Shown here in pieces: positions 372 to 19,757 of a DNA stretch of 20,037 nucleotides. A model generated the notes under the pieces. That model was given only the letters and a program-made list of their open reading frames with translations. It was not told the origin of the DNA and ran no database searches. Position 1 is the stretch's first letter. Each line of letters begins with the position of its first letter. The position numbers and the translations under genes were made by a program. This DNA is from Octopus sinensis. Taxonomy: Eukaryota. The DNA lies in NCBI RefSeq assembly GCF_006345805.1, contig NW_021824017.1, positions 1 to 20,037 on the forward strand. The letters are read 5' to 3'.

Positions 372-485
372 AATATTTAGTAGAAGTGACAGAGTGACTT
401 AAGGTCTGAGAGTTTCGTGCGTTGGCACAAGTACCAAAGCACATAACTCGAACCTTGGGTCAGTCTGTTATTTCTGCTAAATATT
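372..485 (+). ncRNA. Long imperfect hairpin; candidate pri-miRNA (alternatively a decayed MITE with AATATT flanks)
   Basis: Paired by hand: 372-393/464-485 (22 bp), 395-405/452-462 (11 bp), 410-414/445-449, 417-420/439-442, 422-425/434-437, with an 8-nt loop at 426-433. Five G-U wobbles on the + strand. The hairpin is certain; the miRNA identity is not. Confidence 0.4.
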
Positions 486-844
486 AATAAAAATAAACTT
501 ATATTCATATTCTAATTTCTATTTTTCCTGTACGGATATATATATATATATATATATGACTAATGTAGGATAAAATTTTTTTCGGGAAAAAAATTTTATC
601 AATGGCCAGCATATCAAAAAATACCTTTAAAGGTTAAATTTATAAATAATTTACAAAATAAGGGCAAAAGAAAAATTCTAATGCCAAATATGCCGAAAGA
701 AAGACAAAAATTGTCAAATAACCATTATAATTTATGCGTCTCGAAACAAACCGATAGAAATTTCTAAAATATTCTTTATTACCGTATTGGTCCAATTGCA
801 GGGTTAATTCATAAAATTTTGCTCTCTTCAGCGGCAAATACTTG

Positions 845-1900: not shown

Positions 1901-2429
1901 TGGCTAGAGAGGAAAAAGCTTGGCCTGAGCAGAAAAATACTTGTTTCTGAACCTTTCATACGAGTCCACGATAGAGTTTCTTTTATCTAGGCACCAGGCA
2001 GAGAAATATAATCCGTTTTTCTCTGTCAAAGGTAGGTGGCAAGCAATAATTTTTTTCCAGTACGACGAAAAACAACAGCTGCAAAAACACCAACACCTAT
2101 AACCACGGCATCGGCAGCAGTTGGCAACAGCAGCATCTGCTGCAGCAGGGTAAGCCCATTTACCCTCGCCATTTTCACCTACTTTTCATTGAACTTACTA
2201 GAAGGTAGCATGGCTTTTGCTTCTCACCCGTTTTTCTTCGGGTGATATTCGAGGAAGTTGATGGGAGCTTGACCAGAAGTTGAGAAGAGCTTGGCCGGAG
2301 CAGAAAATGGCTGTTTTCAAATGTTTTCAGATGAGTCCACCATGTAATTCGCTTTACCACACGCATACACACAAGGCAGAGAAGACTAGCTGCTCGTCTG
2401 TAGGTGGAAATACTAAATGCCAGTAACTT

Positions 2430-3564: not shown

Positions 3565-3725
3565 GCAGGAGTGGCTGTGTGGTAAGTAGCTTTCTTACTA
3601 ACTACATGGTTCCATGTTCAGTCCCACTGCGTGGCACCTTGGGCAAGTGTCTTCTACTATAGCTTCGGGCCGACCAAAGCCTTGTGAGTGGATTTGGAAG
3701 ACGGAAACTGAAAGAAGCTCGTCGT

Positions 3726-3769
<44 letters not shown>

Positions 3770-4080: not shown

Positions 4081-4242
4081 ATATACGACTGGCGTCTTTC
4101 AGTTTCCGTCTACCAAATCCACTTACAAAGTTTTGCTCGACCCGAAATAAAGTTGAAGACACTTGCCCAAGCTGCCACGCAGTGGGACTGAACCCGAAAC
4201 CATATGGCTGGGAAGCAAGCTTCTTACCACGCGGCCACGCCT
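4081..4242 (-). mobile_element. SINE family A, 5' half
   Basis: Reverse-complement match to 3565-3726. Confidence 0.88.
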
Positions 4243-4659: not shown

Positions 4660-5066
4660 GGCGACGCGCTGGCAGAATTGTTAGCACGCCGGTCAAAATG
4701 TTTTAGCGGTATTTCGTCCGTCTTTACGTTCGGAGTTCAACTTCCGCCGAGGTCGACTTTGCCTTTCATCCTTTCGGGGTCGATAAATTGAGAACCAGTT
4801 GCATACTGGGGTCGATATAATCGACTTAATCCGTTTGTCTGTACTTGTTTGTCCTCTCTGTGTTTAGCACCTTGTGGGCAATAAAGAAATAGGTATTTCG
4901 TCTTGTGCCTTTACGTTCTGAGTTCAAATTCCGCCGAGGTCGACTTTGCCTTTCATCCTTTCGAGGTCGATAAATTAAGTACCAGTTGCATTCTGGAGTC
5001 GGTCAACACGACTGGCCCTCTCTCCCAAAACTTCGGGCCTTGTGCCTAGAGTAGAAAAGAAGAATT
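4660..5066 (+). mobile_element. SINE family B dimer (long-tail unit followed by a headless short-tail unit)
   Basis: A-box tggcagaattgttag, B-box gagttcaa; central gcctttcatcctttcggggtcgataaa motif (as I recall, similar to the Meta-SINE domain); restarts at ggtatttcg at 4892. Confidence 0.9.
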
Positions 5067-5176
5067 AAAACCGTAACAAAGTACGCTCTGGCCACGATTC
5101 TCATTACATTGTTATAACTCACAGCAATCCCATCCTAAGTTTATCCTTACACAAATACATAAAGTAAATCATGTGC

Positions 5177-6050: not shown

Positions 6051-6505
6051 TTTTCTTCTTCTTCTTACAGCATTCACCCGGGGTGGGTTGAGCTGGGTTC
6101 ATTCATCCTCAATGCTGCATCTCTCACAAATGCCGACCAGGCCAGGCGATTTGAGGCTAACGACTGCGTGATCTCCAACCACTCCTTATTCCACCGGCGA
6201 ACGCGGCGTAGACATGGGGGCCTAGGTTCGGTTCCAGGTCAGCCTTGACTGTCATCAGCCAGGTTTTTCGCCAACCCTGAAGGGGAGTTGGGGCGAACGC
6301 CATAGATATGGGGGCCTAGGTTGGGTTCCTGATCAGCCTTGACCGTCTTCAGCCAGGTTTTTCGTTGTCCACCACAACGCTTTCGCCAACCCTGAAGGGG
6401 AGCTGGGGCAATTGCTTCGTAGATGAATTCTCCTGGTTGACGACGGAGGGCATGACCCAGCCAACGCAGACGTCTCGTTAGGATGACTTGTCGGAGGGAA
6501 GTGAT
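6051..6505 (-). mobile_element. 5'-truncated RTE-type LINE 3' end with internal duplication
   Basis: Peptide RRLRWLGHALRR...GWRKRCGGQRKTWLKTVKAD...GPHIYGVR, then RRWNKEWLEITQSLASNRLAWSAFVRDAALRMNEPSSTHPG*, (GAA)n tail, 10-bp TSD tctgcagatc at 6041-6050 and 6506-6515. Confidence 0.85.
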
Positions 6506-6707
6506 TCTGCAGATCATTAACGCATGATTGATTGCACATCATGCTGAGTGGTGTTCTGTATAATTAACCTCATTATCAATAAAATGTGAAGGTTTTAAAC
6601 GCAAAATATGGTAGTCTGCCAAATCATAGCATAAAAATAAGTTGGTACGAGTCTTCTTAGGGGTCATGTTCCTTTGTTTTGTATCAAATTGGGGCTTATG
6701 CTCTTTG

Positions 6708-8725: not shown

Positions 8726-10037
8726 TTAAACGATAAACTGGAAAGTTATACAGATTTTTACAGTTCCAGTGATGGATTGGATCTGTAGTCTTCGAATTAG
8801 CTTTCTCCTTTCTGGATTTGAGAAACTTCATTTCTCAGGATTGGTATTTAGACAGTGTGTTACATATCTCAGTGCCCCAATAATTACAAGTATAAGCCTG
8901 GATAGTGCAACTATAGATTTCTCAATAGTTCAGCATAGATGTTCTCTTTTTCACTGATCTTCAGTTTTATGTTAACATCCGCTGGGCGGCTAATTTCTAC
9001 AACTCTGCACGGTTTCTCTTCTCTATCCCAAATCATTATATTAGGTCTGTTGTGCTTACATTTTATTGAGGTCTTCACTGGTACATTCCACCAGTATTCC
9101 TTTTAATTTTGAATGGCTATGACTTCTACCATATTGTGGGTTCTTATTTCTTTGTCCTCGGGATTATCCTTCCGACGGATTTCATTATAGAGTGTCCTAG
9201 CTACAACGTCATGTCTCATCGGTTGATAGTACCATGATGGTATTCTCAGACAACTGCTTATGATGTGAGTGATATCTTCAGAGTGAACTCCACAGAGTCT
9301 GCATCGGTTGTCACACTTTACGGCTTTACCTGCATCTCTATCCCTTTTGTGCATCAGGTGGTGGTGGTGACCCCCTTCGGTCAGACACTGACCATGGGTT
9401 TGCACCTAGAGAGTTACCCTCTGAGGCACAAGTCTGGGCAAGGTTGTTTTTTTTTTAATGAAAGACCAGCAGTCGCCCATGCATACCGGCCTCCTCTCTC
9501 CACGTCACCGATGTTGTCCAAAGGAAAGGCAAAGGGGCCGATACAGCTTGGCACCTGTGACGTCGCAACTCATTTCTACAGCTGAGTAAACTGGAGCAAC
9601 TTGAAATAAAGTGTCTTGCTCAAGAACACAACACGCAGCCCGGTCCGGGATTCGAGCTCACAACCTCACGATCGTAAGCTCGACGCTCTAATCACTGAGC
9701 CACGCGCCTTCACAAGTACTTGTGCATCAGGTACTTGGTTGATATTTCCTGTTTCTGGATTGCAAACGCATAACCTTCAAAGTGGAAGGTAGTAATCCGG
9801 CTGCTTTGATGATCGATGTTACTATCAGCTTTCTACTAAGATATCCATGCATAGTCTTCTGCTCATAGAGGCTCATCCTTTCATCTGATGATACATTGCG
9901 GTAGAGTCGTGCGACTTCTTTGGGCATGATATTCTAGGTTATCAGACAAAGAGTGTTGCTCAAGGAGCTGCCTTCCAAGTTTTATGATGTTATCAGCCTC
10001 ATGTAGGTAAACTTAGTCAAGGGATGCACTTCGACAC
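8726..10037 (-). pseudogene. 5'-truncated R4/Dong-clade non-LTR retrotransposon, C-terminal zinc knuckle and restriction-like endonuclease; frameshifts, stops and a SINE insertion
   Basis: After removing the SINE: KTMHGYLSRK...FEGYAFAIQKQEISTKYLMHKRD...CRLCGVHSEDITHIISSC...RHDVVARTLYNEI...WWNVPVKTSIKCKHNRPNIMIWDREEKPCRVVEISRPADVNIKLKISEKENIYAELLRNL...GALRYV...LIRRLQIQSITGTVKICITFQFIV*. The CCHC, RHD, (P)D..E/K and GALG motifs are typical of R4-clade elements. Confidence 0.88.
9360..9719 (-). mobile_element. Full-length tRNA-derived SINE family D (CORE-like central region) nested in the R4 LINE
   Basis: Head gtgaaggcgcgtggctcagtgattagagcg...agctcgaatccc; (CAC)n tail; 13-bp TSD ttgtgcatcaggt at 9347-9359 and 9720-9732. 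Removing it restores the LINE frame TKYLMHKRD. Confidence 0.92.
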
Positions 10038-10193
10038 TTGGTGGTTAAAAGATGTTTCCGAAGGGATATGATATGGCATTCAGAGTTTATCCATACACAT
10101 TCAAAGGGATATGATGCGGCATTTGGATCGATGTTAAGCCTCTTTCGCCTTGTTTTCGTTTTCGGTACAGGTGGTCTACATCACTGTTTATGT

Positions 10194-10297
10194 GAGGCTA
10201 TAGCAGAAGATACTTGCCTAAAGTGCCACGCAGTGGGACTGAACCCGGAACTATGTGGTTGGAAAGCAAGCTACTTACTTCACAGCCACGCGCAAGC
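10194..10297 (-). mobile_element. SINE family A head fragment
   Basis: gtgccacgcagtgggactgaacccggaactatgtggttgg matches the other A copies. Confidence 0.85.
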
Positions 10298-10792: not shown

Positions 10793-10892
<100 letters not shown>

Positions 10893-11140
10893 GTCTCTCT
10901 GTCTGTCTGTCGGTCTGTCTGTCTATCTATCTATCTATTCACTCACACACACACACACACATATTTATTTACACTTACACACATATGCACACACACATAA
11001 AAACACACACTCGTATATATATATATATATATACGTGTATATGTTTATATGTGTGCAGGCATCTGTGATGAGGCGCTCTCTCGCGTGAATACGTGCGTAC
11101 GCGTTTGTGTGCGCGTGTGTGCGTGCATATGCATGTGTGT

Positions 11141-11650
11141 GCATGCATGTGTATGTATGTATGTATGTATGTATGTATGTATGTATGTATGAATGTATCA
11201 TGTATGTATATATGTATGCATGTATGTATGTATGTATGTATGTATGTATGTATGTATGTATGTATGTATGTATGTATGCATGTATGTATGTATATATGTA
11301 TGTATGCATGTATGTATGTATGTATGTATGTATGTATGTATGTATGTATGCATGTATGTATGTATGTATGTATGCATGTATGTATGTATGTATGTATATA
11401 TGTATGTATGCATGTATGTATGTATGTATGCATGTATGTATGTTTGTATGTATGTATGTATGTATGCATGTATGTATGTATGTATGCATGTATGTAAGTA
11501 TGCATGTATGTATGCATGCATGTATGCATGTATGCATGTATGTATGCATGTATGTATGTTTGTATGTATGTATGTATGTATGTATGTATGTATGTATGTA
11601 TGTATGCATGTATGTATGCATGTATGTATGTATGTATGCAGGTATGTATG

Positions 11651-11684
<34 letters not shown>

Positions 11685-12426
11685 TGTATGTATGCATGTA
11701 TGTATGTATGTATGCATGTATGTATGCATGTATGTATGTATGTATGCATGTATGTATGTATGTATGCATGTATGTATGTATGTATGTATGTATGTATGTA
11801 TGTATGCATGTATGTATGTATGTATGTATGTATGTATGTATGCATGTATGTATGTATGTATGTATGTATGTATGTATGTATGTATGTATGTATGTATGCA
11901 TGTATGTATGTATGTATGCATGTATGTATGCATGTATGTATGTATGTATGTATGTATGTATGTGTGTATGCATGTATGTATGTATGTATGCATGGATGTA
12001 TGCATGTATGTATGTATGTATGTATGCATGTATGCATGTATGTATGTATGTATGTATGTATGTATGTATGTATATATGTATGTATGCATGTATGTATGTA
12101 TGTATGTATGTATGTATGCATGTATGTATGTATGTATGTATGTATGTATGTATGTATGCATGTATGTATGTATGTATGCATGTATGTATGCATGTATGTA
12201 TGTATGTATGTATGTATGTATGCATGTATGTATGTATGTATGCATGTATGTATGTATGTATGCATGTATGTATGTATGCATGTATGTATGTATGTATGTA
12301 TGTATGTATGCATGTATGCATGTATGTATGCATGTATGTATGCATGTATGTATGTATGGTATGTGTTGTATGTATGTATGGTATGTATGTATGTATGTAT
12401 GTATGTATGTATGTTATGTATGTATG

Positions 12427-12457
<31 letters not shown>

Positions 12458-12459
12458 TG

Positions 12460-12490
<31 letters not shown>

Positions 12491-12689
12491 TGTATGTATG
12501 CATGCATGTATGTATGTATGTATGTATGTATGTATGTATGTATGTATGCATGCATGTATGTATGGTATGTATGTATGTATTATGTATGTATGTATGTATG
12601 CATGCATGTATGTATGCATGTATGTATGTATGTATTGTATGTATGTATGTATGTATGTATGCATGTATGTATGTATGTATGTATGTATG

Positions 12690-12721
<32 letters not shown>

Positions 12722-12737
12722 TGTATGTATGTATGTG

Positions 12738-12769
<32 letters not shown>

Positions 12770-12780
12770 TGTATGCATGT
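11141..12780. repeat. 1.64-kb (ATGT)n array with frequent ATGC variant units
   Basis: Visible; explains all 300-600 aa YVCM/HTYI ORFs. Confidence 0.98.
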
Positions 12781-13169
12781 GTGTGTGTGTATATGTATGC
12801 TCACATCGGTGTGTATGTTGTGTGTGTGTCTAGCTTCTGTATACATTCTAATGGAAAGCCAGTCTGCACCGCTTCACAGCTTCATGTTGTGTCATAAGAG
12901 ATATTACCGAATCTTGGTACGGCAACCGTTACTTGTTGCATACGTAGTAGTAGAGGGGGTGGTGGTGGCAGTCGGTTGTAGTAGTAGTGGTGGTGGTGGT
13001 GGTGGTGGTGGGGGCTGGCTGTGGGGGGGGTGTGTTGATGATGACAATAATAATGATAATAATGATAGTAATAGTTACTTTCGTTTTTTTTTTATTTTTT
13101 GTTATTGCGATTTATTTGGAAGAATGATATTGATTTCTCTATTAACTGTTACACCAAGTGCTTTGATGT

Positions 13170-14045: not shown

Positions 14046-14875
14046 GTAAGTAGTAGTACAAGCAGTAGCAGAAGCAGCGGCAGCCACAGTAGCATTAGTA
14101 TTAGTATTAGTAGTAGTAGTAGTAGTAGTATTAGTATTTGCAATAGTAGTAGTAGTACCAGTAGTAGCAGCAATAGTAATAGTCGTTGTAGTATTAGTAG
14201 TAGTGGTTGCGGTACTGATACGCTGGTGAGGCGGCGAGCTGGCAGAGTCGTTAGCACGCCAGTCGAAATGCTTAGCGGTATTTCGTCTGCCGCTACGTTC
14301 AGAGTTCAAATTCCGCCGAGGTCGACTTTGCCTTTCATCCTTTCGGGGTCGATGAATTAGGTACCAGTTACGCACTGGCGTCGATATAATCGACTTAATC
14401 CGTTTGTCTGTTCTTGTTTGTCCTCTCTGTGTTTAGCCCCTTATGGGTAGTAAAGAAATAGGTATTTCGTCTGCCGCTACGTTCTGAGTTCAAATTCCGC
14501 CGAGGTCGACTTTGCCTTTCATCCTTTCGGGGTCGATAAATTAAGTACCAGTTACGCACTAGTCGATGCAATCGACTTAATCGGTTTGTCTGTCCTTGTT
14601 TTTCCTCTCTGTGTTTAGCCCCTTGTGGGTAGTAAAGAAATAGGTACTGATACGCTGGTGTTGATGGCTGTGGTGGCGGTGGTGTAAGCGTTGTTTGTGT
14701 TAGTATTTGTAGTTGTGGTGGTGGTGCTAGTGGTGGTGATGGTGGTGGTGCTAGTGGTGGTGATGGTGGTGGTGGCATCAGTGGTTGTGGTGGGGTTACT
14801 TTTTGTGATAGTGGTGGCGCTGGTTGTGGCGGTTGTGTTTAAGGTTGTTGTTGTGATGATGGTGGCTGTGTTTCT
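14046..14875. repeat. Degenerate (TAG)/(GTG) triplet low-complexity tract, split by a SINE B dimer
   Basis: Triplet tracts at 14046-14210 and 14661-14875. Confidence 0.8.
14229..14642 (+). mobile_element. SINE family B long-tail dimer with 18-bp TSD
   Basis: TSD ggtactgatacgctggtg at 14211-14228 and 14643-14660; second unit restarts at ggtatttcg (14461); both units end taaagaaata. Confidence 0.95.
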
Positions 14876-15126: not shown

Positions 15127-15530
15127 TAATCGACTAGCCCCTTACCCCAAAATTTTGGGGTCGATAGAATAAAGTACCTGTTGAGCATTTGGACAGATGT
15201 AATCGACTCGTCTCCCTCCTCCAAAATTTTGGGTCAATAAAATTGGGGTCGATGTAATCGACTGACCCCCTACTCCAAAATTTTGGGGTCGATAGAATAA
15301 AGTACCTGTTGAGCATTAGGACCGATGTAATCGTTCGTCTCCCTCCTCCAAAAGTTTGGGTCAATAAAATAAAGTATCTGTTGAGCACTGGGGTCGATGT
15401 AATCGACTGACCCCCTACCCCAAAATTTTGGGGTCGATGAAATAAAGTATCAGTTAAACACAGAGGTCAATGTAATCGATTTACACTTTCCCCGAAAATG
15501 CTGGCCTTGTGCCAACGTTTGAAATCAATA
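15127..15530 (+). repeat. ~73-bp minisatellite built from the SINE B 3' module, with A/B higher-order alternation
   Basis: Units start at 15157, 15231, 15285, 15358 and 15430; junctions are CCCCAAAATTTTGGGG-type palindromes. Confidence 0.88.
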
Positions 15531-15533
15531 TTG

Positions 15534-15747
15534 CTTTCTACTCTAGGCACAAGGCCCGAAATTTTTGGGGAGGGGGGTCAGTCGATTAGATCGACCCCAG
15601 TACGCAACTGGTACTTAATTTATCAACCCCGAAAGGATGAAAGGCAAAGTCGACCTCGGCGGAATTTGAACTCAGAACGTAAAGACAGACGAAATACCGC
15701 TAAGCATATCGCCCGGCGTGCTAACGTTTCTGCCAGCCCACCGCCTT
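15534..15747 (-). mobile_element. SINE family B, full-length short-tail copy
   Basis: Reverse complement of head, core and the cttcgggccttgtgcctagagtagaaag tail also seen at 5030-5060. Confidence 0.92.
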
Positions 15748-15778
15748 GTTTGAAATTAATATTTAAGGGCTACTTAAA

Positions 15779-15924
15779 GGCAGATAGCTGGCAGAAACGT
15801 TAGCACGCCGGGCGAAATGCTTAGTGGTATTTGGTCTGTCGCTACGCTCTGAGTTCAAATTCCGCCGAGGTCGACTTTGCCTTTCATCCTTTCGGGGTCG
15901 ATTAAATAAGTACCAGTTACGCAC
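15779..15924 (+). mobile_element. SINE family B, 3'-truncated, head-to-head with 15534-15747
   Basis: ggcagatagctggcagaaacgttagcacg...gagttcaaattccgccgaggtcgac; ends in a fold-back at 15910-15941. Confidence 0.9.
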
Positions 15925-15940
15925 CAGTGCGTAACTGGTA

Positions 15941-16076
15941 CGCGCCTTCACTCTAAAACCCACGCCTAACCACTAAGCCACGCACCTTCACTCTAAAACC
16001 CACGTCTAACCGCTAAGCCACGCGCCTTTACTCTAAAACCCACGCCTAGCCATTAAGCCACGTGCCTTCACTCTAA
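15941..16076 (-). repeat. 40-bp minisatellite (3.4 copies) derived from the SINE D head and A-box
   Basis: Unit cgcgccttcactctaaaacccacgcctaaccactaagcca; its ctaaccactaagccacgcgccttcac matches ctaatcactgagccacgcgccttcac at 9688-9713. Confidence 0.88.
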
Positions 16077-16086
16077 CATCCATAAA

Positions 16087-17539
16087 GCAGATATTGATGA
16101 AGTAGATTCTAAGGAAATTACATTTAGTGATGAAGCTTCTGGACTTGCGTTAGATTCCAAATATAAATTAGAAGAGAGTATCAATCCAATATTTTTCCCA
16201 CAAGAAATAATAAGTGATCACGTGAGAAATTTCGAACTGTTAAAAGCTAAGGCGAAGCTTTTCGCCTCTCGTTTGATAGAAATACGCTTGGAGACAATAC
16301 AGCAGTGAGTTGCTATAGAAAATGAAATTCTGATTCAAGATGATTACTTCAAAGTAGGTGGTCCTCTCTGTTACTGTCATGGTATTAATGGACATTTGGT
16401 AAGTTTATCTGAAAGGCATATTGTAAAGGAATCGCAACGTTTTATAAATTTATCACTACTAAGTTTAAAAGCTATTTTATTGCATAATGGAAATTTAAAG
16501 CCATCTATCTTCATCGCTTATTCAGTGCATTTAAAAGAAATTTATGCTAACATGGGATCCTTTTTAATGAAATTCAATACAAGCTCCCTCTTCCCAATGG
16601 AATCTTTGTGGAGATATTGAAGTAATTGCTTTGTTAATAGGGGATTAACAAAATACTACTGCTTTCTATGTCTGTGAAACAGTGATTCTATTACAGAGTA
16701 TTATAAAAGAAGAAACAAGTTAACTAGGTCTCTTTTTGACTAGAAGTTCCTTTAATTGATAAAGAAAATTATAATTGGCTGATGAAGATCGTTGGGACAA
16801 TTGATATGAAAATTCTAGAGATTTAATTAAATGCTTCTCAGAACTATTTCCGAAAGTAAGGGCTGCTAAAAATTGAGGTAATTTTTAAAGGTTTAAAATC
16901 CGAGAAGTATTACAAGGTATAACTTTTAGCACGCCGGGCGAAATGCTTAGCGGTATTTCGGCTGCCGTAACGTTGTGAGTTCAAATTCCGCCGAGGTCGA
17001 CTTTGCCTTTCATCCTTTCGGGGTAGATAAATTAAGTACCAGTTACGCACTGGGGTCGATGTAATCGACTTAATACCTATGTTTGTCCCTTGTTTGTCCC
17101 CTCTGTGTTTAGCCCCTTGTGGGTAATAAAGAAATAGAAATAGGTATTTCGTTTGCGTTACGTTCTGAGTTCGAATTCCGCCGAGGTCGACTTTGCCTTT
17201 CATCCTTTCGGGGTCGATAAATTAAGTACCAGTTACGCACTGGGGTCGATGTAATCGACTTAATACCTATGTTTGTCCCTTGTTTGTCCCCTCTGTGTTT
17301 AGCCCCTTGTGGGTAATAAAGAAATAGGTGTAACTTTTTATGATGCAGTAAAAATATTTGAGGTAAAAGCTCTGCCTGTATTCAAAAGGGACTGTATTTA
17401 CTTCTTAGGAAAATACGTCACCTAAAGTGGAGTTGAGAAACTTACAGAAGCATTCAAGGTATGAGCTGTCTCATACTTACTAAATTATATTTCTTACACC
17501 GACACCTAGATCTTTTACCCTGAAAATCTTGGTGCAGTC
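16087..17539 (+). pseudogene. Decayed DNA transposase, Chapaev3-like (CMC superfamily), interrupted by a SINE B dimer
   Basis: Colinear motifs across frameshifts: PIFFPQEIISDHVRNFELLKAKAKLFASRL; RFINLSLLSLKAILLHNGNLKPSIFIAYSVHLKEIYANM; WNLCGDIEVIALLIG; TKYYCFLCL; LFPKVRAAK; IREVLQ; FLGK; PENLGAV. The family name is from recall of this motif series and needs HMM confirmation. Confidence 0.78.
16928..17326 (+). mobile_element. SINE family B long-tail dimer, 5'-truncated, nested in the transposase
   Basis: 12-bp TSD ggtataactttt (16916-16927) / ggtgtaactttt (17327-17338); internal junction gaaatagaaata|ggtatttcg at ~17143. Confidence 0.92.
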
Positions 17540-17964: not shown

Positions 17965-18381
17965 TTTTATTTTTATTTTTTTATTACTTGTTTCAGTCAT
18001 TTGACTGCGGCCATGCTAGAGCACCGCCTTTAGTCGAGCAAATCGACCCCAGGACTTATTCATTGTAAGCCTAGTACTTATTCTATCGGGCTCCTTTAAT
18101 CAAACCACTAAGTTGCGGGGACGTAAACTCATCAGCATCTGTTGTCAAGCGGTGTTAGGGGTACAAACACAGACACGCAAACATACACCACACACACGCA
18201 TATATATACATATATACGACGGGCTTCTTTCAGTTTTCCGTCTACCAAATTCACTCACAAGGCTTTGGTCGGCCCGAGGCTAAAGTAGAAGGCACTTGCC
18301 CAAGGTGCTACGCAGTGGGACTGAACCTGGAACCATGTGGCTGGTAAGCAAGCAACTTACCACACAGCCACTCCTACGCCT
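17965..18381 (-). mobile_element. Full-length SINE family A
   Basis: Colinear reverse complement of 3565-3990. Confidence 0.92.
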
Positions 18382-19067: not shown

Positions 19068-19100
<33 letters not shown>

Positions 19101-19127
19101 GTATATATATATATAATTATATATATT

Positions 19128-19160
<33 letters not shown>

Positions 19161-19231
19161 AACACAAATACGCTCACGCACATACACATAGATATAGAAA
19201 TGTATATATATGTATATATAATTATATATAT

Positions 19232-19312
<81 letters not shown>

Positions 19313-19370
19313 AACACACATACGCTCAGCACATTACACATAGATATAGAAATGTATATATATGTATATA

Positions 19371-19438
<68 letters not shown>

Positions 19439-19536
19439 ATATATACATACTACATATATATATTATATAATATATATATAAACACACATACGCTCCGCAC
19501 TACACATAAATATAGAAATGTATATATATGTATATA

Positions 19537-19576
<40 letters not shown>

Positions 19577-19600
19577 ACATCCATACACACACATATATAT
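19050..19600. repeat. Higher-order repeat of a (TA)n-embedded ~60-bp core (3 copies, period ~152-168 bp)
   Basis: Core aaacacacatacgctc...gatatagaaatgtatatatatgtatatataatt at 19160, 19312 and 19480. Confidence 0.85.
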
Positions 19601-19757
19601 ATACGACGGGCTTCTTTCAGTTTCTATCTACCAAATCTACTCACAAGGCTTTGGTCGGCCCGAGGCTAAAGTAGAAGACACTTGCCCAAGGTGCCACGCA
19701 GTGGGACTGAACCCGGAACCATGTGGTTGGTAAGCAAGCTCCTTACCACAGAGCAAC
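19600..19757 (-). mobile_element. SINE family A, 5' half
   Basis: Near-identical to 18224-18365; the source of the MVPGSVPLRGTLGKCLLL pseudo-ORF. Confidence 0.92.

What the first reader, a model, noticed from the sequence alone, without database searches (positions are those of the whole stretch)
372..485. Pri-miRNA-like 114-nt hairpin with strand-biased G-U pairs in otherwise unique sequence
Seen: about 46 paired positions, with a near-continuous 33-bp lower stem (one G-G mismatch) and an 8-nt apical loop. All five transition-type differences in that stem (381/476, 386/471, 388/469, 399/458, 400/457) are G-U pairs on the + strand and would be A-C mismatches on the - strand; a neutrally decaying DNA inverted repeat would give this about 1 time in 16-32. 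Known: coleoid cephalopods carry a large set of lineage-specific miRNA families. Inference: a + strand pri-miRNA with arms near 395-420 (UGACUUAAGGUCUGAGAGUUUCGUGC) and 439-464 (GCACAUAACUCGAACCUUGGGUCAGU). I do not recognise either arm as a named miRNA.
Basis: partly seen in the sequence, partly recalled or inferred. Interest (0 to 1): 0.7.

Follow-up and report, generated by a model that had tools for sequence, protein, structure and literature searches.

The report
Decayed 114-base palindrome, unproven microRNA
A real, very stable 114-base hairpin sits at 372-485, but its stability is what a neutrally decaying DNA palindrome (probably a small transposon relic) would give, and the microRNA idea could not be tested with the data available here.

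Summary
The structure is exactly as described. There are 46 pairs, a 33-pair lower stem with one G-G mismatch, an 8-nt loop and five G-U pairs at the stated coordinates. The + strand folds at -62.2 kcal/mol (z -11), the - strand at -46.3. The strand-bias argument is weaker than claimed. The whole palindrome has 7 transition differences, 5 favouring + and 2 favouring - (416/443, 426/433), p = 0.45. In a neutral-decay simulation the observed stability is ordinary, and the strand gap is reached in 5.5% of runs.

No Rfam family matches. None of 30 plausible seed sites is assigned to an annotated Octopus vulgaris miRNA.

The element is a 46% G+C island with sharp edges in 18-21% G+C DNA. It is palindromic to its centre and a TA lies at each end. 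My best reading is a relic of a short palindromic non-autonomous DNA transposon (or a one-off inverted duplication), with the RNA hairpin as a by-product.

Copy number, conservation and small-RNA reads are the decisive tests. None could be run, because no collection here holds animal genomes; a control with the window's own SINE also found nothing. Interest is low unless reads show processing.

The parts
372..485 (+). Whole 114-nt imperfect palindrome / RNA hairpin
   Evidence: + strand MFE -62.2 kcal/mol, z -11.1. - strand -46.3, z -8.7. Intact when folded with flanks. G+C 39.5%, core 380-477 46%, against 18-21% in the flanks.
372..405 (+). 5' arm of the lower stem (34 positions, 33 paired)
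   Evidence: Pairs with 452-485. One G-G mismatch at 394/463. G-U pairs at 381/476, 386/471, 388/469, 399/458 and 400/457.
452..485 (+). 3' arm of the lower stem
   Evidence: Pair table.
406..409 (+). 5' side of the asymmetric internal loop (4 nt against 2 nt at 450-451); site of a 2-nt indel between the arms
450..451 (+). 3' side of the internal loop
410..425 (+). 5' arm of the degenerate upper stem (13 pairs with 434-449). It holds the mismatches 415/444 (U-U), 416/443 (C-A) and 421/438 (G-A).
434..449 (+). 3' arm of the upper stem
426..433 (+). Apical loop on the + strand. 426/433 is C-A and 427/432 would pair, so the palindrome runs to its centre. The - strand closes it to a 4-nt loop.
374..375 (.). 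Candidate TA target-site duplication, left copy (the element proper would then be 376-481)
   Evidence: Read directly from the sequence. Not significant in AT-rich DNA.
482..483 (.). Candidate TA target-site duplication, right copy
   Evidence: Read directly from the sequence. Not significant in AT-rich DNA.
395..420 (+).
   Evidence: Sequence confirmed. The geometry is atypical because a 23-bp stem lies below it (inference).
439..464 (+).
   Evidence: Sequence confirmed.

Best explanation
The feature is a DNA-level relic. A short, almost fully palindromic non-autonomous DNA transposon (MITE-like, comparable to the human 80-bp MADE1 element) inserted into AT-rich DNA, plausibly at a TA dinucleotide. 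The two arms have since diverged by ordinary mutation.

The arms differ by 11 substitutions and one 2-nt indel over about 55 aligned positions. If they were identical at birth, each arm is about 0.12 substitutions per site from the ancestor. On the octopus transposon clock this is about 30 million years; that age is an inference.

The RNA hairpin is a by-product of the palindrome. It happens to be more stable on the + strand because five of the seven transition differences fell as G-T rather than A-C on that strand.

Shown: the palindrome, its divergence pattern, the compositional island, and the sufficiency of neutral decay. Inferred: mobility, the TA duplication, the age, and the lack of an RNA function.
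For: 1. The palindrome runs to its very centre with no unique spacer; the arms align end to end.
2. The edges are sharp and the element is a compositional island. The core is 46% G+C against 18-21% in the 100-200 nt on each side, and no flanking 114-nt window between 150 and 1000 exceeds 33%. This fits inserted foreign sequence better than a copy of local DNA.
3. A neutral-decay simulation used 800 mutated perfect palindromes with the same number and kinds of changes. It gave a best-strand MFE of -63.7 +/- 6.3, so the observed -62.2 is ordinary (59% were at least as stable). A strand gap of at least 15.9 kcal/mol occurred in 5.5%.
4. Overall transition bias is 5:2, p = 0.45.
5. TA lies at 374-375 and 482-483, bounding a 106-bp element. 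Tc1-Mariner is by far the largest DNA-transposon superfamily reported for O. vulgaris (119 Mb, 362 families), and 15% of that genome is unclassified repeat.
6. Repeats in inverted orientation also make the window's most stable hairpin: the inverted SINE pair at 15600-15924 folds at -246.7 kcal/mol.
7. No RNA family matches.
Against: - Only one copy was seen, and mobility needs a family. Genome-wide copy number could not be measured.
- The TA duplication is not statistically meaningful in AT-rich DNA, and no superfamily-diagnostic terminal motif was recognised.
- In the lower 34 positions, 5 of 6 differences preserve + strand pairing. In the upper part, none of 6 substitutions does (Fisher p = 0.015; the partition was chosen after the fact). 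That pattern, a stem of about 34 bp and single-stranded flanks are also what a selected pri-miRNA stem would show.
Confidence: 0.45

Rival explanations
1. One-off local inverted duplication. A fold-back or template-switch event during replication or repair produced a single spacerless palindrome that was never mobile and has decayed neutrally since.
For: - Single copy in the window.
- The palindrome extends to the centre.
- Neutral decay explains the energy.
- Disruptive changes and the indel are concentrated near the centre. Palindrome centres are known to be the least stable part (established knowledge).
Against: One arm should be ancestral local sequence, yet both arms (42% and 37% G+C) are compositional outliers against flanks of 18-21%. 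Complex-sequence spacerless palindromes of non-transposon origin are rare in animal genomes (general knowledge, not tested here).
Confidence: 0.2
2. A + strand miRNA (or miRNA-like hairpin RNA) gene, probably young and lineage-specific and possibly born from the palindrome. Microprocessor cuts about 11-13 bp above the basal junction at 371/372, and Dicer cuts about 22 nt further on. The products would be near 384-406 (5p) and 452-473 (3p). In the first reader's register they would be near 399-420 and 439-460.
For: - Very stable hairpin with unpaired flanks.
- The lower stem has 34 positions, close to the 35 +/- 1 bp optimum for Microprocessor (established knowledge).
- All five transitions in it are G-U on + (p = 0.0625).
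- The strand energy gap is reached by only 5.5% of neutral simulations.
- Octopus has 90 novel miRNA families of unknown source, and the authors call their count an underestimate (PMC9699675).
Against: - No Rfam hit.
- No candidate seed is assigned to an annotated Ovu miRNA, and three are listed as non-seed k-mers. Those tables are truncated, and they cover only miRNAs shared by two octopus species.
- Total arm length is 52-54 nt. Under the lower-stem register the terminal region is 46 nt, which is long for animal precursors.
- No CNNC motif lies in the single-stranded 3' flank (486-500 is AATAAAAATAAACTT), and there is no UG at the basal junction.
- The base rate is low: 164 miRNA genes in a 2.8-Gb genome, against two or three comparably stable complex hairpins in these 20 kb alone.
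Confidence: 0.1
3. A transcribed double-stranded RNA element of the + strand that is bound and edited by ADAR. It would lie in an intron or UTR and have no small-RNA product. The + strand G-U excess would come either from selection for pairing or from transcription-associated mutation asymmetry.
For: - A 33-pair near-perfect helix exceeds the length ADARs need (established knowledge).
- In octopus most A-to-I editing lies in hairpins of introns and 3'UTRs (PMC9699675).
- A possible + strand exon with splice-site-like borders lies at 2061-2149, which would put the hairpin in a + strand intron.
Against: There is no evidence of transcription. The exon is unverified. The first kilobase shows no T>A or G>C excess of the kind seen on sense strands of introns (AT skew +0.07, GC skew 0.00). 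The strand bias is not significant over the whole hairpin.
Confidence: 0.08

Closest known systems
MADE1, a mariner-derived palindromic MITE, and the hsa-mir-548 hairpins derived from it (Piriyapongsa and Jordan 2007; from memory)
   Same: A short (about 80-110 bp), almost fully palindromic element with no coding capacity. It lies in AT-rich DNA with TA at both ends, and its transcript folds into a long near-perfect hairpin that can enter the miRNA pathway.
   Different: MADE1 is defined by thousands of copies and a known parent transposon (Hsmar1). Only one copy of this element has been seen, no parent is known, and there is no sequence similarity beyond a TTAG-like start, which is not evidence.
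Canonical animal pri-miRNA (MirGeneDB-grade), including the 90 novel cephalopod/coleoid/octopus families of PMC9699675
   Same: A single hairpin with unpaired flanks, a lower helix of about 34 bp, and tolerated G-U wobbles on the putative sense strand.
   Different: The arms are 52-54 nt in total rather than about 35. The hairpin is much more stable than needed. It matches no known family or annotated seed. There is no read evidence and no conservation evidence.
Inverted transposon pairs that form long dsRNA (ADAR substrates), such as the inverted SINE pair at 15600-15924 in this window
   Same: Hairpin potential arises from inverted-repeat DNA, not from selection on RNA.
   Different: The SINE pair has 148-nt arms from a recognisable multi-copy family and a 29-nt spacer. 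The 372-485 element is compact, has no spacer and matches no other repeat in the window.

Membership tests
Animal miRNA gene (MirGeneDB / Fromm criteria) | Hairpin with at least 16 nt of complementarity between the two arms | tested here: met
46 pairs in all. The lower-stem register gives about 21 of 22 paired.
Animal miRNA gene (MirGeneDB / Fromm criteria) | Stem of about 35 bp between a single-stranded basal junction and the apical junction | tested here: inconclusive
   The flanks are unpaired. The full stem is 52-54 nt per arm, which is too long. The lower segment up to the 4x2 internal loop has 34 positions and would fit.
Animal miRNA gene (MirGeneDB / Fromm criteria) | Reads of 20-26 nt from both arms, homogeneous 5' ends, 2-nt Drosha and Dicer offsets | not testable with these tools
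   No small-RNA read data are accessible.
Animal miRNA gene (MirGeneDB / Fromm criteria) | Conservation of the locus and arms in related species | not testable with these tools
   No animal genomes are in the searchable collections. Scans found 0 matches. The control with the window's own SINE peptide also found nothing.
Animal miRNA gene (MirGeneDB / Fromm criteria) | Primary-sequence processing motifs (basal UG, apical UGU/GUG, CNNC 16-18 nt 3' of the Drosha cut); enriched in pri-miRNAs but not obligatory | tested here: not met
Lower-stem register: positions 371-372 are AA, there is no UGU/GUG at 406-409, and there is no CNNC in 486-500.
Known RNA family (Rfam 15, including its miRNA families) | Covariance-model match | tested here: not met
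   No hit at gathering scores in the window. No hit over 372-485 at E<=10.
Annotated Octopus vulgaris miRNAs (PMC9699675) | Seed identity with an annotated family | tested here: not met
   30 candidate 8-mer sites from plausible 5' ends were searched. None is assigned to an Ovu miRNA, and 3 are listed as 'Non-seed kmer'. Positive examples such as Mir-34 CACTGCCA are present in the tables. The tables are truncated and mature sequences are not held.
MITE (miniature inverted-repeat transposable element) | Terminal inverted repeats, small size, no coding capacity | tested here: met
   114 bp, and the arms are inverted repeats over the whole length. The only ORF is a 43-aa chance frame with no homologue.
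MITE (miniature inverted-repeat transposable element) | Target-site duplication flanking the repeats | tested here: inconclusive
   TA at 374-375 and 482-483 fits a Tc1/mariner-type duplication. In register, 8-bp flanks match at 5 of 8 positions, with a chance probability of about 0.1 by my own estimate. Neither is meaningful in AT-rich DNA.
MITE (miniature inverted-repeat transposable element) | Multiple dispersed copies in the genome | not testable with these tools
   One copy in 20 kb. The genome is not available.
Hairpin-RNA (endo-siRNA) locus of the Drosophila type | Long inverted repeat (hundreds of bp) giving phased 21-nt siRNAs | tested here: not met
   The arms are only about 55 nt. 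Reads are not testable.

The most novel reading that the evidence does not exclude
The hairpin is a miRNA caught soon after birth. A palindromic insertion about 30 My old, younger than the O. vulgaris / O. bimaculoides split, would be missed by design in the published two-species annotation. Its 34-bp lower stem would already be kept paired on the + strand and processed by Drosha and Dicer. This would point to palindromic transposon relics as one source of the unexplained cephalopod miRNA expansion.
Probability: 0.07. Interest if true: 0.55.

Novelty: new member of a known kind. Interest (0 to 1): 0.2.

Why it matters
As a transposon relic or a one-off palindrome it is ordinary. Such hairpins are the main source of false miRNA predictions, and the case shows that a G-U strand-bias argument must count the whole palindrome. 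If small-RNA reads showed precise processing, it would be a lineage-specific miRNA born from a palindrome, in a group whose large miRNA expansion has no known source (PMC9699675). That would be of moderate interest to miRNA-evolution and cephalopod genomics researchers.

Tried and rejected
- **Rfam.** Searched at gathering scores over the window and at E<=10 over 300-560. Only chance hits in the neighbouring TA repeat.
- **Other copies in the window.** Pattern search with up to 3 mismatches and blastn-short found none.
- **Exact or degenerate arm and terminal patterns in public collections.** Metagenome (2 scans), prokaryotic genome and viral contigs all returned 0. These collections do not hold animal genomes, so this says nothing.
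- **Protein route to other copies.** The 43-aa ORF across the hairpin has no exact record and no word-sharing homologue. A full HMMER scan of 1.84 billion proteins gave two chance hits in unrelated repeat proteins. A matched control, a 49-aa peptide from the window's own multi-copy SINE, also found nothing. These negatives therefore carry no weight on copy number.
- **Exact look-ups of three other window ORFs, to recover the contig or orthologous loci.** None is on record.
- **Literature full-text search for six arm substrings in U and T spelling.** No paper found.
- **Supplements of PMC9699675.** They do not contain the arm strings. A positive control showed they hold no mature sequences at all, so that negative is void. 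Only the seed-site tables were usable.
- **Target-site duplications of 2, 3, 4 and 8 bp.** Only TA fits cleanly, and it is not significant.
- **tRNA or tmRNA.** None found.
- **Mirtron.** Rejected, because the hairpin ends are AAUAUU...AAUAUU, not GU...AG.
- **Helitron end, piggyBac TTAA and hAT termini.** None was recognised. This rests on memory and is only a lead.

Full report
**1. The observation**

The 114 nt at 372-485 fold as RNA on the + strand into one hairpin of -62.2 kcal/mol. The z-score is -11.1 and no shuffle of 200 folds as well.
- 46 pairs.
- A lower stem 372-405/452-485 with 33 pairs and a single G-G mismatch at 394/463.
- An asymmetric internal loop, 406-409 against 450-451.
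- A degenerate upper stem and an 8-nt apical loop at 426-433.
- G-U pairs at 381/476, 386/471, 388/469, 399/458 and 400/457.

The - strand folds at -46.3 kcal/mol, z -8.7. With 50 nt of flank on each side the hairpin is unchanged, and about 12 unpaired AT-rich nt border it on both sides. A sliding 114-nt fold of the whole window on both strands ranks it second among non-low-complexity sequences. First is an inverted pair of SINE copies at about 15600-15924. The hairpin is real and far beyond chance.

**2. The strand-bias argument**

I aligned the 5' arm against the reverse complement of the 3' arm. The palindrome runs to its centre. The arms differ by 7 transitions, 4 transversions and a 2-nt indel.
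- Five transitions are G-U on +. All five lie in the lower stem.
- Two transitions (416/443 and 426/433) are C-A on + and would be G-U on -. This is why the - strand closes the apex better.

Two-sided binomial tests give p = 0.0625 for 5 of 5 and p = 0.45 for 5 of 7. The lower stem is defined after the fact as the stretch with no disruptions, so it is selected to lack A-C pairs. The chance of a run of five like-signed transitions among seven is 1 in 8 by my own count.

I also simulated neutral decay. Perfect palindromes were built from either arm and given 7 transitions, 4 transversions and a 2-nt deletion at random, 800 replicates in all.
- Best-strand MFE was -63.7 +/- 6.3 kcal/mol, and 59% of replicates were at least as stable as the real hairpin.
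- A strand difference of at least 15.9 kcal/mol arose in 5.5%.

So the stability needs no selection, and the strand asymmetry is marginal. One pattern does lean toward selection. In the lower 34 positions, 5 of 6 differences preserve + strand pairing. In the upper part, none of 6 substitutions does (Fisher p = 0.015). That partition was again chosen after seeing the data. Terminal repeats of a transposon, or faster decay of a palindrome centre, would give the same gradient in disruptive changes.

**3. What surrounds it**

The hairpin is a compositional island. G+C is 39.5% overall and 46% for 380-477, against 21% and 18% in the 100 nt on either side. No flanking 114-nt window between 150 and 1000 exceeds 33%. 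The palindrome stops abruptly at 372/485.

The window as a whole is repeat-rich non-coding animal DNA. It contains:
- Long (AC)n, (TGTA)n, (ATCT)n and (TA)n arrays.
- At least eight copies of a roughly 170-nt SINE-like element.
- Decayed retroelement ORFs, one with a weak zf-RVT hit.

I could not verify the organism with the tools. The SINE resembles the tRNA-derived octopus SINEs only from my memory.

**4. Attempts to find relatives**

The decisive questions are genomic copy number, conservation in other species and small-RNA reads. None could be answered.
- The hairpin has no second copy in the window.
- Pattern scans of the metagenome, prokaryote-genome and viral collections found nothing, as expected for collections without animal genomes.
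- I tried the protein collections as a back door. The 43-aa ORF across the hairpin has no exact record, no word-sharing homologue, and only two chance hits in a full scan of 1.84 billion representatives.
- A matched control, a 49-aa peptide encoded by the window's own multi-copy SINE, also found nothing. These negatives therefore say nothing about copy number.
- Exact look-ups of other window ORFs failed to retrieve the contig.

**5. Comparison with known RNAs**

Rfam 15 has no match at gathering scores anywhere in the window, and none over the hairpin at E<=10. Full-text searches for arm substrings found no paper.

The held supplements of the octopus miRNA paper (PMC9699675) contain no mature sequences; control strings for miR-124 and let-7 are absent. 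They do contain 8-mer target sites per miRNA. I derived the 8-mer sites for 32 plausible mature 5' ends in two processing registers and searched 30 of them.
- None is assigned to an Ovu miRNA.
- Three are explicitly listed as 'Non-seed kmer'.

This is weak evidence, because the tables are truncated. That annotation also required presence in both O. vulgaris and O. bimaculoides, which split about 50 My ago.

**6. Geometry**

This section rests on established knowledge of Microprocessor: a stem of about 35 +/- 1 bp and a cut about 11-13 bp above a single-stranded basal junction.
They would sit on a 23-bp lower stem and include three internal loops. That register is unlikely.
- A better register treats the 4x2 internal loop as the apical junction. 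The 34-position lower stem then fits the ruler, with 5p about 384-406 and 3p about 452-473. The G-G mismatch would fall near the middle of the duplex. The terminal region would be 46 nt, which is long for animals.
- Processing motifs are absent in that register. There is no UG at 371-372, no UGU/GUG at 406-409, and no CNNC in 486-500.

Geometry therefore neither establishes nor excludes a miRNA.

**7. Best explanation**

I read the element as a relic of a short palindromic non-autonomous DNA transposon, with the RNA hairpin as a by-product (confidence 0.45). The points in favour are:
- A palindrome without a spacer.
- Sharp edges and foreign composition.
- AT-rich surroundings, with TA at 374-375 and 482-483 bounding a 106-bp element.
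- Neutral decay is sufficient to explain the stability.
- The reported dominance of Tc1-Mariner among octopus DNA transposons (119 Mb, 362 families), plus 15% unclassified repeats.
- The same window shows inverted repeats making an even stronger hairpin.

The arm-to-arm Jukes-Cantor distance is 0.233, or about 0.12 per arm. The paper PMC13282606 equates distances of 0.09 and 0.2 with bursts at about 25 and 56 My. On that scale the palindrome would be about 30 My old. This inference assumes identical arms at birth and an octopus origin.

Rival explanations are:
- A one-off inverted duplication (0.2). Both arms being compositional outliers counts against it.
- A + strand miRNA or miRNA-like hairpin, possibly born from the palindrome (0.1).
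- A transcribed ADAR-substrate helix (0.08).

The last two are not exclusive of a transposon origin.

**8. Base rates**

O. vulgaris has 164 annotated miRNA genes in a 2.8-Gb genome that is 66% repeat. These 20 kb alone hold two or three complex hairpins of comparable stability. Without reads or conservation, the prior that any one such hairpin is a bona fide miRNA is at the per-cent level. The marginal strand asymmetry and the 34-bp stem raise it only modestly.

**9. Verdict**

The structure is confirmed. The evidence offered for selection is marginal. The miRNA interpretation is untested and, in the proposed register, unlikely. On either reading the feature belongs to a known kind. Interest is low (0.2) unless the simple checks listed under next steps show precise processing or deep conservation.

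Noticed in passing
window 4660-5090, 14229-14585, 15575-15950, 16904-17327; fragment at about 1840-1905: At least eight copies of a roughly 170-nt SINE-like repeat, 78% mean column identity, with an invariant core TTCAAATTCCGCCGAGGTCGACTTTGCCTTTCATCCTTTCGG. The GAGTTCAAATTCCGCC part looks like a tRNA B box, but ARAGORN calls no tRNA. From memory it resembles tRNA-derived octopus SINEs; this was not verified.
   Followed up: partly
window 15600-15747 / 15777-15924: Two SINE copies lie head to head with a 29-nt spacer. They form a roughly 150-bp near-perfect hairpin (-246.7 kcal/mol, z -28). It is a far larger double-stranded RNA former than the finding, and a likely ADAR substrate if transcribed.
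   Followed up: partly
window 3567-3735, 4102-4238, 10153-10289, 18235-18375, 19593-19757: A second dispersed repeat family of about 140-165 nt, present in both orientations at 85-91% identity. It was not classified.
   Followed up: no
window 11150-12799; also 2435-2982, 10793-10938, 19068-19574: Very long microsatellites: (TGTA)n of about 411 units over 1.65 kb, (AC)n of about 275 units, (ATCT)n and (TA)n. They produce the extreme GC and AT skews of those kilobases and many spurious long ORFs.
   Followed up: partly
window 569-600: GATAAAATTTTTTTC-GG-GAAAAAAATTTTATC reads as a perfect 15-nt-arm palindrome; the DNA fold pairs 14 bp (z -4.1). It lies 85 nt downstream of the hairpin. It is low-complexity, and its meaning is unknown.
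   Followed up: partly
window 2061-2149 (+): An 89-nt stretch that is open in one frame. It is preceded by a polypyrimidine tract and AG (tttttttccag) and followed by CAG|gtaagc, so it looks like an internal exon on the + strand. If real, the hairpin would lie in the upstream intron of a + strand gene.
   Followed up: no
window 6239-6517 (-), 9103-9405 (-): Decayed retrotransposon ORF fragments. The second has a weak zf-RVT match (E 0.004, below Pfam's cut-off). The first has an RLRWLGH-type motif that I associate with LINE reverse transcriptases, but no Pfam hit.
   Followed up: partly
window 15127-15479, 15940-16076: Tandem duplications with periods of 128, 73 and 40 nt next to the SINE cluster. 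The 73-nt unit contains the SINE 3' motif GGGGTCGAT..TAATCGACT, suggesting SINE-tail-derived minisatellites.
   Followed up: no
window 12928-13032, 14049-14224, 14690-14871: Trinucleotide-type (GTG/GTA/GCA)n tracts that give long artefactual ORFs rich in T, S and P on the - strand.
   Followed up: no
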